A stretch of 63,024 nucleotides of DNA, the filler included, from Octopus bimaculoides (Eukaryota), in NCBI RefSeq assembly GCF_001194135.2. It is 3 parts of 3 records of this genome, joined end to end, with 100 filler letters (N's around TTAATTAATTAA, not from the genome) between each part and the next. Parts side by side here need not be neighbours in the genome. Positions count along the whole stretch, not along the records: positions 28,982 to 58,381 come from NC_068999.1; 2 more parts are not named here. One strand, written 5' to 3'. Below the pieces are notes generated by a model. That model saw nothing but the letters and a program-made list of their open reading frames with translations, made no database searches and was not told where the DNA came from. Within the stretch, counting starts at the first letter, position 1; the number at the start of each line of letters is the position of its first letter. Positions 39,783-46,043 of the stretch are shown here, piece after piece. The position numbers were made by a program, and so were the translations under genes.

Positions 39783-40390
39783 GGTGACGAGCTGGCAGAA
39801 ACGTTAGCACGCCGGGCGAAATGCTTAGCGGTATTTCGTCTGCCGTTACATTCTAAGTTCATATTCCGCCGAGGTCGACTTTGCCTTTCATCCTTTCGGG
39901 GTCGATTAAATAAGTACCAGTTACGCTCTGGGTCGATGTAATCGACTTAATCCCTTTGTGTGTCCTTGTTTGTCCCCTCTATGTTTAGCCCCTTGTGGGC
40001 AATAAAGAAATAAGAAACGTTAACACGCCGGGAGAAATGCTTAGAGGTATTTCGTCCGTTTTTACGTTCTGAGTTCAAATTCCGCCGAAGTCAATAAGTA
40101 CCTGTTGAGCACTGGGGCCGATGTAATTGGCTTATCCCCTCCTCCGACCTTGCTAGCCTAGTGCCAAAATTTGAAATCAATATGAAGGTGTCAAGTTAGC
40201 AGAATCTTTAGCACACCTTTAGCATTTTGCCTGCTTTTACGTTTTGAGTTCAATTTCCACCGAGGTTGATTGTGCCTTTCATCCTTACAAGGTTGATAAA
40301 ATAAGTACCAGTTGAGCACTGGGGCTGACGTAATCGACTTATCCCTTTCCACGAAATTGCTGGCCTTGTGCTAAAATTTGAAACCAGTGT
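39783..40390 (+). mobile_element. Cluster of three S1 SINE copies
   Basis: Same head and core repeated head-to-tail. Confidence 0.8.
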
Positions 40391-43790: not shown

Positions 43791-46043
43791 ATGAATAATC
43801 ACAGACATAAAGCAAGAAATCAAAACTCTTATGAGAAATCTGTAACTTTTGAAGATATTAAAAAATTGATGAAGATTCTCAATCAGAAACTTAATGTCGC
43901 TATAAAAGAGGAAGTTACTTTCTCGACAGGGGATCATAGCAATGCTATGGTTGAAGATGTGATGGAAACACCGGTTCACGGCCAATATAAAAGTGTTACA
44001 AAGTCTAAAATGTCTGCTGATGCCCCGGAATTTATCCCAAGATCTCAGCAACTGATTCAGTTGAAATCTATCTTTAATCATTTTCCTTTTGAAAATAACA
44101 ACAGCGAAGAGACTTTGATGGTTCCGTCGAGTACAATAGGAAACGAGGGAGCCGTGCAAATGAACGAAGCTAGTAAAAGCACCAACAAAATTAGCATTTG
44201 TTTTCCACCTCCTCCCGCTGAACAAGAAGAAATTAAAAATGCTGCGAAAGATGTTTCTCAAGTAACAACTTGTGCTGTGAAGTCAGAGACTGAAGATGAG
44301 AGGAAAATAGATGAAGCTAAAGAAGAGGTTACTTCTAGTAATGAAGAAATACTGAATGCTGTACCAGGGACGAACCAAACGAATTTGAAACATATCAATC
44401 GGAATTTTTCAGCTATTGATAAAGGAAATTATGATGATAATGAAGAGAGCACTAATTATGAATGTGTGAAGGAGATGCTGGGAGAAACTAAACGCTACAT
44501 AGAAACTGAAGTAGATAAAGATCAAATGGAAAATTGTGAGGAAGCAGACGACAACAGGGATACAAGTGTGCTGTGTCTTTCACCAGTGAATGATGAAGGA
44601 AAAGAGGAATCTGTCAGCAATATCGATACTACAAATAATGCTGATGACAGTGTGATTGAAGAAATATCCAGCGATGATCAATCAAAGTCAAAAGATGAAA
44701 TATCTGTCTCACAGGAGAAACCAGAAGATGTGGAAGCTAATACAATACCGAACGTGGAAGAAAGTGAAACCAAAGATAAGGATGAAGATGAGATAAATAG
44801 TACAGATTGTGAAACTGTGCAAGGTGGGGATATTAGCAGTCGATTGAGGGCCGAAATGTTGGCCTTAATTAATAAAGGAAGAAAGTCGGACGACGATGAG
44901 GATGAAAATAATGTCGCGAATGATGAAGAAATTAACTCGAGTAACAGCAGTAAAGTTGCTGAATATAAAACCAGTCCAGAAGCAAAAGAAGATTTAGTGG
45001 ATTCAAATGAACATTCAGCCGAAGAATGCTGCAAAGATCAGAGCTTGTTTACAAATAAAAACGAAAACATGTCTGCGAAGAAAGAAGAAGCTTTAGAAAG
45101 TACAAAGGACAAAAACGAACGCGGTACTCTGAGTAACTGTAATGAAATTAATATTGTTGGTGTTAATAAGAGAGAAAAACATTTTAATGATGTTAATGAG
45201 ACAAGTTCTAATACCGATACCATTTCTACTATTGATGACGAGAATGATACCGATCACACGGAACAAAGCAGCGTTGAATTATCAACGGAACCTTTTAATA
45301 AATCTCAGAACTCGGAATCGTATGACATGGACTCTACAGTTCCGCTTTGTCACAATACAACACCAAAATACGTTCCGCTACAGAGTGGAAACATATCTGT
45401 TTGTCTTTTCACTGGGAAAGAAAACAGTAATAACAACACATATGAAACTTTACAATCGAACCAAAGGATGTTTAGAACTGGAGAATATTCAAGCGAAAAG
45501 AAAGGCCAGCTAAATGACTATATTAGTAAAATGAAGGAACTGAAGACCAGCCAAGAAGAATTCAGGAAGAAATGGAATTCCAATTTAAGTAAAAGAGAAC
45601 ATGCCTATTATACTTACTTAAAATGTACTGAGAAAGCTAAAATCTATCGGGCGTGGGCTGCAAACGTCCCTACAATTCTACCAACGAAATTATGGAATAC
45701 GAAAAAACAAAACAGCTTGAAATGGCAAAGCATTTCAGATGACATCAGTCTGTTGTGTTTGAAGTCTGAAGTGGTTCTTTCAAAGATGAAAGCTGATAAA
45801 CACAAGGATAAATACGAGGAAATTGACCGAAAAATGATATCCAGCATTCAAGAGGAGAACAACAGCAAAAGCGAACAGAATGTGCTGGAAAATGCATGGA
45901 AGAAAGCAACAAACACTGAAGAACAGATGGCGCGTGAAATGTGGAGTTACAGGCGGAAATGGTTAGAAAACTATGCCAAGTTTTACCAAAAGCCAGAAAT
46001 AATTGATAAAATGAGTAGCATGGCTGGTAAAAGACTGAGATGA
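43791..46043 (+). CDS. Intronless 750-aa uncharacterised protein: N-terminal helix, PAM2 motif, FPPPP motif, acidic/Asn-Ser-rich disordered region, helical C-terminal domain
   Basis: 2253-nt uninterrupted ORF in ~65% AT DNA. ATG has A at -3 (aaaATGa) with an in-frame TAA three codons upstream. No microsatellite, SINE or gap inside it, although both flanks are full of them. Confidence 0.85.
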   Translation: MNNHRHKARNQNSYEKSVTFEDIKKLMKILNQKLNVAIKEEVTFSTGDHSNAMVEDVMETPVHGQYKSVTKSKMSADAPEFIPRSQQLIQLKSIFNHFPFENNNSEETLMVPSSTIGNEGAVQMNEASKSTNKISICFPPPPAEQEEIKNAAKDVSQVTTCAVKSETEDERKIDEAKEEVTSSNEEILNAVPGTNQTNLKHINRNFSAIDKGNYDDNEESTNYECVKEMLGETKRYIETEVDKDQMENCEEADDNRDTSVLCLSPVNDEGKEESVSNIDTTNNADDSVIEEISSDDQSKSKDEISVSQEKPEDVEANTIPNVEESETKDKDEDEINSTDCETVQGGDISSRLRAEMLALINKGRKSDDDEDENNVANDEEINSSNSSKVAEYKTSPEAKEDLVDSNEHSAEECCKDQSLFTNKNENMSAKKEEALESTKDKNERGTLSNCNEINIVGVNKREKHFNDVNETSSNTDTISTIDDENDTDHTEQSSVELSTEPFNKSQNSESYDMDSTVPLCHNTTPKYVPLQSGNISVCLFTGKENSNNNTYETLQSNQRMFRTGEYSSEKKGQLNDYISKMKELKTSQEEFRKKWNSNLSKREHAYYTYLKCTEKAKIYRAWAANVPTILPTKLWNTKKQNSLKWQSISDDISLLCLKSEVVLSKMKADKHKDKYEEIDRKMISSIQEENNSKSEQNVLENAWKKATNTEEQMAREMWSYRRKWLENYAKFYQKPEIIDKMSSMAGKRLR

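What the first reader, a model, noticed from the sequence alone, without database searches (positions are those of the whole stretch)
44001..44042. PAM2 motif (KSKMSADAPEFIPR) predicts binding to poly(A)-binding protein
Seen: aa 71-84 KSKMSADAPEFIPR. Established: PAM2 peptides (about S-x-L-[NS]-x-x-A-x-E-F-x-P, e.g. Paip1 SKLSVNAPEFYP, Paip2, ataxin-2, eRF3) bind the MLLE domain of PABPC and sit in disordered regions. This match keeps the A, E-F and P, with Met in place of Leu. Inference: the orphan docks on poly(A) mRNPs as a translation/decay regulator or granule component. If the protein is TE-derived, it may originally have used PABP to capture its own poly(A) RNA.
Basis: partly seen in the sequence, partly recalled or inferred. 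Interest (0 to 1): 0.72.

Follow-up and report, generated by a model that had tools for sequence, protein, structure and literature searches.

The report
PAM2-like peptide in transposon-derived octopus gene
An intronless octopus gene, whose tail end was captured long ago from a Penelope-like jumping element, carries a short, strictly conserved peptide that closely resembles the docking motif used to bind poly(A)-binding protein. This makes it a plausible but untested new regulator of messenger RNA.

Summary
Window 44001-44042 encodes KSKMSADAPEFIPR, aa 71-84 of a 750-aa single-exon ORF (43791-46043, +).

The peptide is a near-miss PAM2:
- It fits LNxxAxEFxP except for Met in place of Leu at position 3.
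- Pfam PAM2 is the only meaningful hit but falls below threshold (13.9 bits against a cutoff of 20). Human Paip1, Paip2 and ataxin-2 peptides score 30-35.
- Its only PDB sequence hit is the Paip1 PAM2 peptide.

Conservation supports function:
- The peptide is invariant in O. vulgaris and Argonauta despite saturated synonymous sites.
- In a much more distant ortholog (27% overall identity) only positions 8, 11 and 13 change. Crystal structures show these side chains make no MLLE contacts.
- It is one of the four most conserved islands in the protein.
- It lies in a predicted coil between two helices.

The protein is not a pure orphan. Residues 591-740 are homologous (hhalign E 3e-21) to ORF1 proteins encoded upstream of RT plus GIY-YIG ORFs of Penelope-like elements. 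The gene has no ORF2, is syntenic between Octopus species and is under strong purifying selection, so it is a domesticated gene. None of about 60 transposon ORF1 relatives has a PAM2, so the motif was probably gained in the host gene.

MLLE binding is inferred, not shown.

The parts
43791..46043 (+). Single-exon CDS of a 750-aa protein. It is a host gene with orthologs in Octopus vulgaris (760 aa, 92% identity), Argonauta hians (782 aa, 59%) and an unidentified organism (L003).
   Evidence: dN/dS over the whole CDS is 0.10-0.14. The flanks are collinear with the O. vulgaris locus, while only the CDS aligns to Argonauta. No RT or EN similarity lies nearby.
43836..43928 (+). Conserved N-terminal amphipathic helix (aa 16-46, KSVTFEDIKKLMKILNQKLNVAIKEE...)
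   Evidence: AF2 predicts helix 20-46 with pLDDT about 66. It is one of the four most conserved islands against the distant ortholog L003.
44001..44042 (+). PAM2-like peptide KSKMSADAPEFIPR (aa 71-84). In PAM2 numbering: M74 = position 3, S75 = 4, A76 = 5, A78 = 7, E80 = 9, F81 = 10, P83 = 12.
   Evidence: Argonauta shows 7 synonymous and 0 non-synonymous changes across the 14 codons. L003 reads KSKMSADAAEFVPM.
44100..45470 (+). Long acidic, low-complexity, predicted disordered middle region (aa 104-560). It contains three short conserved islands: aa 196-214, 344-363 and 465-498.
   Evidence: AF2 pLDDT is below 50. dN/dS is 0.15-0.20.
45561..46010 (+). C-terminal three-helix domain (aa 591-740) homologous to ORF1 proteins of Penelope-like retroelements
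   Evidence: The HMM search found 60 relatives matching only profile positions of about 575-745. hhalign gives probability 99.4%, E 3e-21. Relatives lie upstream of RVT_1 and GIY-YIG ORFs. The AF2 model has pLDDT 88.5 and pTM 0.81. dN/dS is 0-0.04.

Best explanation
The window carries a lineage-restricted, intronless host gene seen in octopods plus one unidentified, more distant organism.

Its C-terminal roughly 150-residue three-helix domain was domesticated from the ORF1 protein of a Penelope-like retroelement. This is shown by homology and by genomic context.

Upstream of a long acidic disordered region, the protein has a conserved N-terminal helix. About 25 residues after that helix, in an unstructured linker, sits the peptide S-K-M-S-A-D-A-P-E-F-I-P-R.

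Inferred mechanism:
- The peptide is a functional, somewhat weak PAM2-type short linear motif that docks on an MLLE domain, most likely that of cytoplasmic poly(A)-binding protein.
- Met74 would fill the pocket normally taken by Leu at position 3.
- Ser75 would stabilise the beta-turn, as Ser does in Paip1.
- Ala78 would pack against the MLLE methionine.
- Glu80, Phe81 and Pro83 would make the canonical C-terminal contacts.
- This would tether the ORF1-derived domain to polyadenylated mRNPs.

The motif was acquired in the host gene, not inherited from the transposon protein. What the tethered protein then does (translation control, decay, or interference with retroelement RNPs) cannot be told from sequence.
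For: Motif match:
- Every position that PMC2854688 and PMC7356810 describe as contacting MLLE is canonical or conservatively replaced (positions 4 N/S, 7 A, 9 E, 10 F, 12 P)..
- The peptide is 9/13 identical to the Paip1 PAM2, which is its only PDB sequence hit.
- PAM2 is the only meaningful Pfam hit in all four orthologs.

Constraint pattern:
- Argonauta has 0 non-synonymous against 7 synonymous changes in the 14 codons.
- N-terminal dN/dS is 0.013-0.017, with dS saturated against Argonauta.
- In the distant ortholog L003 (27% overall identity) the motif keeps 10/13 residues, placing it in the top 3.7% of 13-aa windows.
- The three changes there (P79A, I82V, R84M) fall on positions 8, 11 and 13. 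These are described as solvent-exposed, not conserved, or contacting through the backbone only.
- The sequence just downstream of the motif is unalignable in L003.

Context:
- The peptide lies in a coil between predicted helices 20-46 and 84-96.

Precedent:
- Unkempt's PAM2-like motif also deviates from the ELM pattern at one position, and its deletion releases PABPC (10.1101/2023.09.20.558714).
- Pocket A is wide and shallow and also accepts Phe.

TE origin and domestication.
Against: - The score is sub-threshold in Pfam (13.9 against 20 bits) and about 10 bits below textbook PAM2 peptides.
- Met replaces the Leu whose mutation cost about three orders of magnitude of affinity in Paip2. Ala sits at position 5, where Pro-to-Ala cost 5-fold.
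- Between Octopus and Argonauta the whole of aa 1-103 is almost invariant, so at that depth the motif does not stand out from its flanks.
- The above-background conservation rests on a single distant ortholog. That sequence carries a frame shift, and its source organism is unknown.
- The chance that all three changes hit non-contact positions is only about 0.07.
- No binding, expression or localisation data exist.
- No complex model could be computed with these tools.
Confidence: 0.55

Rival explanations
1. The peptide is conserved for a reason unrelated to MLLE, and the likeness to PAM2 is coincidental. It might be part of a small N-terminal helical module or the docking site for a different partner.
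For: - The Pfam score is sub-threshold and the ELM pattern fails at position 3.
- aa 1-103 are almost uniformly conserved between Octopus and Argonauta.
- The adjacent helix aa 16-46 is just as conserved in L003, so the two could act as one unit.
- Relaxed PAM2 patterns occur by chance in about 0.8% of shuffled proteins.
Against: - The stricter core occurs in only 0.012% of shuffles.
- The only PDB hit is a bona fide PAM2 peptide.
- The substitutions in L003 avoid every MLLE-contact position.
- The predicted helix downstream (aa 84-96) is not conserved in L003, which argues against a fixed fold around the motif.
Confidence: 0.3
2. The motif is a true MLLE ligand, but its physiological receptor is the MLLE domain of a UBR5/HYD-type E3 ubiquitin ligase rather than PABPC. 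It would then control the protein's turnover, or recruit the ligase.
For: - MLLE domains occur in PABPs and in UBR5 (PMC2854688).
- The Paip1 PAM2 peptide that is the closest PDB match is deposited in two entries (1jh4 and 3ntw). From memory, 3ntw is the UBR5 MLLE complex.
Against: - PABPC is the abundant, general receptor for PAM2 motifs.
- Nothing in the sequence discriminates between the two MLLE domains.
- The two receptors are not mutually exclusive.
Confidence: 0.1
3. One reading: the PAM2 was inherited from the transposon ORF1 protein, which used PABP to capture its own polyadenylated RNA.
For: The C-terminal domain is indeed retroelement-derived.
Against: - None of about 60 ORF1 relatives has a PAM2-like or even an A.EF.P pattern. 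This includes full-length copies next to RT and GIY-YIG ORFs, and an Octopus sinensis copy.
- The profile homology to the TE family covers only aa 591-740, not the N-terminus.
Confidence: 0.03
4. The ORF is not a functional gene but a decaying transposon copy or an annotation artefact.
For: - The CDS is intronless.
- There is a low-complexity acidic middle.
- Annotations call it only 'hypothetical protein'.
- A truncated, frameshifted paralog fragment exists in another organism (L004).
Against: - The 750-782-codon ORF is intact in three species, with dS above 2 and dN/dS 0.10 between Octopus and Argonauta.
- There is one copy per assembly.
- The flanks are syntenic in O. vulgaris.
- No RT or EN lies within 10 kb or more.
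Confidence: 0.02

Closest known systems
Paip1 PAM2 peptide (human PABP-interacting protein 1; PDB 1jh4 chain B, 3ntw)
   Same: It is the closest sequence relative of the peptide: SK[L/M]S[V/A][N/D]APEF[Y/I]P. It shares Ser rather than Asn at position 4 and Pro at position 8, along with the A-x-E-F-x-P core. It is the only PDB hit.
   Different: Paip1 has the canonical Leu at position 3 and Val at position 5, where the octopus peptide has Met and Ala. Paip1 scores 30 bits against PF07145, compared with 20.7 for the octopus 22-mer. The rest of the proteins are unrelated: Paip1 has a MIF4G domain (from my own knowledge), which this protein lacks.
Unkempt PAM2-like motif
   Same: It is a PAM2-like SLiM that deviates from ELM LIG_PAM2_1 at one position. 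It lies in a long disordered region of a protein that also has a C-terminal coiled coil, and its deletion releases PABPC (10.1101/2023.09.20.558714).
   Different: Unkempt is a deeply conserved zinc-finger RNA-binding protein, and its motif has been tested experimentally. The octopus protein has no recognisable RNA-binding domain and nothing has been tested.
L1TD1 (mammalian gene domesticated from LINE-1 ORF1p)
   Same: It is a host gene whose coding sequence derives from a retroelement ORF1 protein, kept under selection without an ORF2. It acts in cytoplasmic RNPs and still associates with its ancestor's ORF1p (PMC4161310, PMC11925450, PMC11014241).
   Different: The donor element class differs (LINE-1 versus Penelope-like). 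The domains are unrelated: L1 ORF1p has a coiled coil, RRM and CTD (from my own knowledge), whereas this protein has a three-helix domain with no PDB relative. I know of no PAM2 described in L1TD1, which I did not check. [quoted passage not shown]
ORF1 proteins of Penelope-like elements (unnamed family: P0005-P0063, P0079)
   Same: They share the roughly 150-aa helical core W..LN.RK..YW..(IY..W)..P.LP.K...EE..S..W (hhalign E 3e-21). Many also have an N-terminal amphipathic helix.
   Different: The TE proteins are 220-550 aa and lack the acidic middle and the PAM2-like peptide. They usually end in a long basic N/Q/R/Y-rich tail that the octopus protein lacks. They are followed by RT plus GIY-YIG ORFs, whereas the window gene is not.

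Membership tests
PAM2 motif (Pfam PF07145; ELM LIG_PAM2_1) | Score at or above Pfam's gathering threshold (20 bits) | tested here: not met
   The full protein scores 13.9 bits, E 0.045. The orthologs score 13.1-15.2 bits. Only the isolated 22-mer reaches 20.7 bits.
PAM2 motif (Pfam PF07145; ELM LIG_PAM2_1) | Hydrophobic anchor at position 3: Leu, or rarely Phe or Pro | tested here: not met
   Position 3 is Met74 in all four orthologs. This is a conservative replacement, but it falls outside [LFP], so the ELM pattern (recalled from memory) fails. An M74L version gains 5.3 bits.
PAM2 motif (Pfam PF07145; ELM LIG_PAM2_1) | Asn or Ser at position 4 (stabilises the beta-turn) | tested here: met
   Position 4 is Ser75, as in Paip1. 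The role of this position is described in PMC7356810 and PMC2854688.
PAM2 motif (Pfam PF07145; ELM LIG_PAM2_1) | Small hydrophobic residue at position 5 (Pro, Val or Thr preferred) | tested here: inconclusive
   Position 5 is Ala76. The ELM class allows it, but Pro-to-Ala lowered Paip2 affinity 5-fold.
PAM2 motif (Pfam PF07145; ELM LIG_PAM2_1) | Invariant Ala at position 7, Glu preferred at 9, invariant Phe at 10, Pro usual at 12 | tested here: met
   Ala78, Glu80, Phe81 and Pro83 are invariant in all four orthologs. The roles of these positions are given.
PAM2 motif (Pfam PF07145; ELM LIG_PAM2_1) | Lies in an accessible, disordered segment | tested here: met
   In the AF2 model aa 47-83 are coil with pLDDT below 50, between helices 20-46 and 84-96. 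The model is shallow (3 sequences), so this is weak evidence.
PAM2 motif (Pfam PF07145; ELM LIG_PAM2_1) | Contact positions conserved in orthologs above the flanks | tested here: met
   Against L003 the motif keeps 10/13 residues where overall identity is 27%, placing it in the top 3.7% of windows. Changes occur only at positions 8, 11 and 13. This rests on a single distant ortholog.
PAM2 motif (Pfam PF07145; ELM LIG_PAM2_1) | Binds the MLLE domain of PABPC in a Phe10-dependent way | not testable with these tools
   No multimer prediction or binding assay was available. Chimeric inputs are not accepted by structure prediction.
Penelope-like element ORF1 domain (unnamed; no Pfam model) | Significant profile homology to the ORF1 core | tested here: met
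   hmmsearch found 60 proteins at E <= 1e-3, all matching profile positions of about 575-745. hhalign gives probability 99.4%, E 3e-21 for aa 591-740.
Penelope-like element ORF1 domain (unnamed; no Pfam model) | Encoded immediately upstream of an RT plus GIY-YIG ORF, as part of an element | tested here: not met
   This holds for the relatives. L006 has RVT_1 at E 3.9e-8 and GIY-YIG at E 1.3e-7. L007 has RVT_1 at E 4.2e-7. L008 has GIY-YIG at E 3.3e-5. The window gene and its orthologs have no RT or EN within 10 kb or more. The window gene is therefore derived from the family and is not an element copy.
Domesticated retroelement gene (L1TD1-like situation) | Single-copy orthologs at a syntenic locus, intact ORF, purifying selection, no element termini or ORF2 | tested here: met
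   There is one locus per assembly. The flanks are collinear with O. vulgaris. dN/dS is 0.10-0.14. No RT or EN is present. Synteny with Argonauta and L003 could not be assessed, because the non-coding DNA has diverged.

The most novel reading that the evidence does not exclude
A cephalopod host gene was born from the ORF1 of a Penelope-like retroelement. It then evolved a PAM2 docking peptide and a Paip-like acidic region de novo. It now sits on PABP-bound poly(A) tails, perhaps co-assembling through its ORF1-like three-helix domain with ORF1 proteins of still-active Penelope-like elements. In that position it could restrain or exploit those elements, or regulate neuronal or germline mRNAs. 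As far as my searches show, this would be the first domesticated Penelope-like ORF1 gene, and a case of a retroelement-derived protein wired into the poly(A) machinery by a newly gained linear motif.
Probability: 0.2. Interest if true: 0.65.

Novelty: new variant of a known kind. Interest (0 to 1): 0.45.

Why it matters
PAM2-MLLE docking is how many regulators reach poly(A) tails, including Paip1 and Paip2, eRF3, ataxin-2, PAN3, Tob, LARP4 and Unkempt.

A conserved Met-variant PAM2 would matter in three ways:
- It would add a lineage-specific player to that network in cephalopods, animals noted for unusual RNA biology.
- It would show that Met is tolerated in the Leu pocket.
- It would give a concrete example of a host gene combining a domesticated retroelement domain with a newly evolved short linear motif.

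Independently of the motif, the work identifies an undescribed ORF1 family of Penelope-like elements and its domestication. Mammals have L1TD1, described as the only known gene domesticated from LINE-1.

If the peptide does not bind MLLE, what remains is an ordinary lineage-restricted TE-derived gene of unknown function.

Tried and rejected
- Pfam on the full protein gave only sub-threshold PAM2 and DUF2277 hits.
- The Rfam and tRNA scans of the piece found nothing.
- The word-index protein search with the whole protein found only two orthologs.
- The same search with an N-terminal alignment found only the L004 fragment.
- A search with a neighbouring coiled-coil exon, meant to identify the organism of ERZ21867824, returned only unnamed proteins.
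- The metagenome scan for N-terminal relatives found none.
- A PDB search with a 41-mer returned only irrelevant weak hits. The 22-mer found Paip1.
- The AF2 model of the whole protein is poor (pLDDT 36). I used it only for the order/disorder layout.
- Foldseek of the confident C-terminal model against PDB and BFVD gave only generic helical bundles (all E above 0.1). I therefore make no fold-based functional assignment.
- hhalign did not support homology between the N-terminal helix and the N-terminal helices of the TE ORF1 proteins, because only the C-terminal domain aligned.
- A literature search for PAM2 peptide strings found nothing. A search for domesticated Penelope-like ORF1 genes found nothing relevant.
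- I rejected the reading of the ORF as a live transposon ORF1, because there is no ORF2 and the locus is syntenic and under selection.
- I rejected the reading that the PAM2 was inherited from the TE, because no TE relative has it.
Full report
**1. The observation**

Window 44001-44042 on the + strand encodes KSKMSADAPEFIPR. These are residues 71-84 of a 750-codon ORF (43791-46043), the only long non-repetitive ORF in the 29.4-kb piece. The rest of the piece is repeats, microsatellites and N gaps, with no Rfam or tRNA hits.

**2. How PAM2-like is the peptide?**

The canonical motif is LNxxAxEFxP (PMC7356810). PMC2854688 describes each position:

| Position | Role |
|---|---|
| 3 (Leu) | Fills a hydrophobic pocket; its mutation in Paip2 costs about 1000-fold in affinity |
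| 4 (Asn) | Stabilises a beta-turn |
| 5 | Prefers Pro, Val or Thr; Pro-to-Ala costs 5-fold |
| 6 and 8 | Solvent-exposed |
| 7 | Invariant Ala |
| 9 | Prefers Glu |
| 10 | Invariant Phe; the main determinant of binding |
| 11 | Not conserved |
| 12 | Usually Pro |
| 13 | Contacts MLLE through the backbone only |

With M74 as position 3, the octopus peptide has S at position 4 (as in Paip1), A at 5, A at 7, E at 9, F at 10 and P at 12. The deviations are Met for Leu at position 3 and a suboptimal Ala at position 5.

Scores:
- Pfam PF07145 is the only meaningful hit but is below threshold: 13.9 bits, E 0.045, against a cutoff of 20.
- The same hit recurs in each ortholog at 13.1-15.2 bits.
- As isolated 22-mers, the octopus peptide scores 20.7 bits and an M74L version 26.0. 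Human Paip1, Paip2 and ataxin-2 peptides score 30-35.
- The ELM pattern as I recall it fails only at Met.
- A pattern relaxed at position 3 occurs in 0.8% of shuffles of this protein. The core [LFPMIV][NS]xxAxEFxP occurs in 0.012%.
- A phmmer search of all PDB sequences with the 22-mer returns one hit, the Paip1 PAM2 peptide (1jh4_B/3ntw), at E 0.51.

So this is a near-canonical but weak PAM2 look-alike. By strict criteria it is not a family member.

**3. Conservation**

Orthologs:
- Octopus vulgaris: 760 aa, 92% identity.
- Argonauta hians: 782 aa, 59% identity. Both are single-exon, with one locus per assembly.
- A more distant ortholog lies on an ENA HiFi metagenome contig from an unidentified organism (L003). 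Its N-terminal piece (9028-9894) and C-terminal piece (9887-10978) are separated by a one-base frame shift at an A6 run. I analysed the two pieces separately.

Between the window and Argonauta:
- Synonymous sites are saturated (dS above 2).
- dN/dS is 0.013 for aa 1-103, 0.15 for the middle and 0.04 for aa 575-750.
- The 14 motif codons carry 7 synonymous and 0 non-synonymous differences.
- At this depth the whole of aa 1-103 is nearly invariant, so the motif does not stand out.

Against L003 (27% overall identity), the motif does stand out:
- L003 reads KSKMSADAAEFVPM.
- 10 of 13 residues are identical, which places it in the top 3.7% of 13-residue windows.
- The best windows form four islands: aa 16-42, 66-85, 629-642 and 698-712.
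- The three changes (P79A, I82V, R84M) fall on positions 8, 11 and 13, which make no side-chain contact with MLLE.
- The sequence after the motif is unalignable.

This is the pattern expected of a PAM2. However, it rests on a single distant sequence, and the chance of all three changes hitting non-contact positions is about 0.07.

A whole-protein AF2 model is poor (pLDDT 36). It places the motif in a coil between helices 20-46 and 84-96.

**4. What the protein is**

A profile search of 1.84 billion representative proteins found 60 relatives. All but two, the window's own protein and the 81-aa N-terminal fragment P0057, match only profile positions of about 575-745. hhalign against 24 of them gives 99.4% probability and E 3e-21 for aa 591-740.

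These relatives have the following features:
- They are 150-550 aa proteins with an N-terminal helix.
- They share the core W..LN.RK..YW...IY..W...P.LP.KF...EE..S..W.
- They usually end in a basic N/Q/R/Y-rich tail.

Where context is available, they sit directly upstream of an ORF with reverse transcriptase followed by a Zn-finger linker and a GIY-YIG nuclease:
- L006: RVT_1 at E 3.9e-8, a CX4CX2C linker, and GIY-YIG at E 1.3e-7.
- L007: RVT_1 at E 4.2e-7.
- L008: GIY-YIG at E 3.3e-5.

RT followed by a C-terminal GIY-YIG nuclease is the architecture of EN+ Penelope-like elements (PMC8557442).

An Octopus sinensis copy (XP_036365366.1) has a degraded RT fragment downstream, so the donor family lives in octopus genomes.

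The window gene itself differs from an element copy:
- It has no RT or EN similarity in the 29.4-kb piece, and neither do its orthologs within 10 kb.
- Its flanks are collinear with O. vulgaris, and only the CDS aligns to Argonauta.
- It is under purifying selection.

It is therefore a domesticated gene.

With a 55-sequence alignment, AF2 models aa 560-750 confidently (pLDDT 88.5, pTM 0.81) with three long helices that form the core of the domain. Foldseek finds no specific relative in PDB or BFVD.

**5. Origin of the motif**

None of the roughly 60 transposon ORF1 relatives has a PAM2-like pattern, or even A.EF.P. The N-terminus has no homologs outside the orthologs, apart from a truncated, frameshifted paralog fragment in the L003 organism (L004). 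The motif was therefore most likely gained in the host gene.

**6. Mechanism (inferred)**

The protein has four parts:
- a conserved N-terminal helix;
- a PAM2-like SLiM in a linker;
- a roughly 450-residue acidic disordered region with three small conserved islands;
- an ORF1-derived three-helix domain that has lost the basic tail of its transposon relatives.

The best-supported reading is that the SLiM docks on the MLLE of PABPC, and possibly of UBR5, with low-micromolar or weaker affinity. That would bring the ORF1-derived domain to poly(A) mRNPs.

Supporting precedents:
- Known PAM2-MLLE affinities span 0.2-40 uM (10.64898/2026.01.10.698208).
- A one-position-deviant PAM2-like motif works in Unkempt.

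I put the probability of F81-dependent MLLE binding at about 0.55. The downstream function is open.

**7. Comparison and novelty**

PAM2 motifs and retroelement-ORF1 domestication (L1TD1; PMC4161310, PMC11925450) are both known kinds. My limited searches found no described counterpart for three things:
- a domesticated ORF1 of a Penelope-like element;
- that ORF1 family itself, given that canonical EN+ elements are described as having a single ORF;
- its combination with a Met-variant PAM2.

I rate the finding as a new variant of a known kind, of moderate interest. The central claim, MLLE binding, remains untested.

Noticed in passing
L006 2763-6440; L007 3502-6647; L008 237-3607: An unnamed ORF1 protein family sits upstream of RT plus C-terminal GIY-YIG ORFs. 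It has a roughly 150-aa three-helix core and no Pfam model. That ORF arrangement is the one seen in Penelope-like elements, which are usually described as single-ORF. In L006 the EN linker has a CX4CX2C motif (Neptune/Nematis-like), and the ORF ends in a (TA)n microsatellite.
   Followed up: partly
L004 10001-10300: This is a truncated, frameshifted paralog fragment of the gene's N-terminus, from the same unidentified organism as L003. The PAM2-like stretch survives as KMPANAAEFVPK in a shifted frame, followed by unrelated repeats. It is probably a pseudogene.
   Followed up: partly
L003 9885-9895: The distant ortholog is split into two frames by a one-base shift at an A6 run in a HiFi metagenome contig. 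I could not tell whether this is an assembly error or a real lesion. The source organism of ENA ERZ21867824 could not be identified.
   Followed up: partly
window 43971-44099: There are no synonymous differences from O. vulgaris across aa 61-103 (about 22 synonymous sites), although dS is about 0.5 in aa 1-60 and 0.2 gene-wide. The numbers are small. This could be chance or an overlapping nucleotide-level constraint.
   Followed up: no
window 44376-44432, 44820-44879, 45183-45284: Three short conserved islands lie inside the otherwise fast-evolving acidic middle. They are NLKHINRNFSAIDKGNY (partly kept in L003 as NKNFSALNK), QGGDISSRLRAEMLALINKG (a predicted helix), and FNDVNETSSNTDT.STID..TDHTEQSSVELS. 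They may be further linear motifs of unknown function.
   Followed up: no
L001 (Argonauta) after the PPPP stretch, alignment columns 143-165 of A1: Argonauta carries a 23-residue poly-Asp/Glu insertion directly after the conserved FPPP(P/S) stretch. This shows that the acidic region expands and contracts freely.
   Followed up: no
window 53437-53831; also 39830-40012 and L002 16536-17649: A dispersed repeat is present in many copies in both the window and the O. vulgaris locus. In the window it forms a 196-bp tandem array. In O. vulgaris it forms tandem arrays of about 184 bp.
   Followed up: no
P0049 (420 aa, source not looked up): This is a divergent relative of the C-terminal domain. Its N-terminal helix (LFDLMRILSQKLDTVIDNL) and its loop region resemble the host-gene version more than the transposon ORF1s do, but it has no PAM2-like motif. 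It may be an independent domestication or a distant paralog.
   Followed up: no
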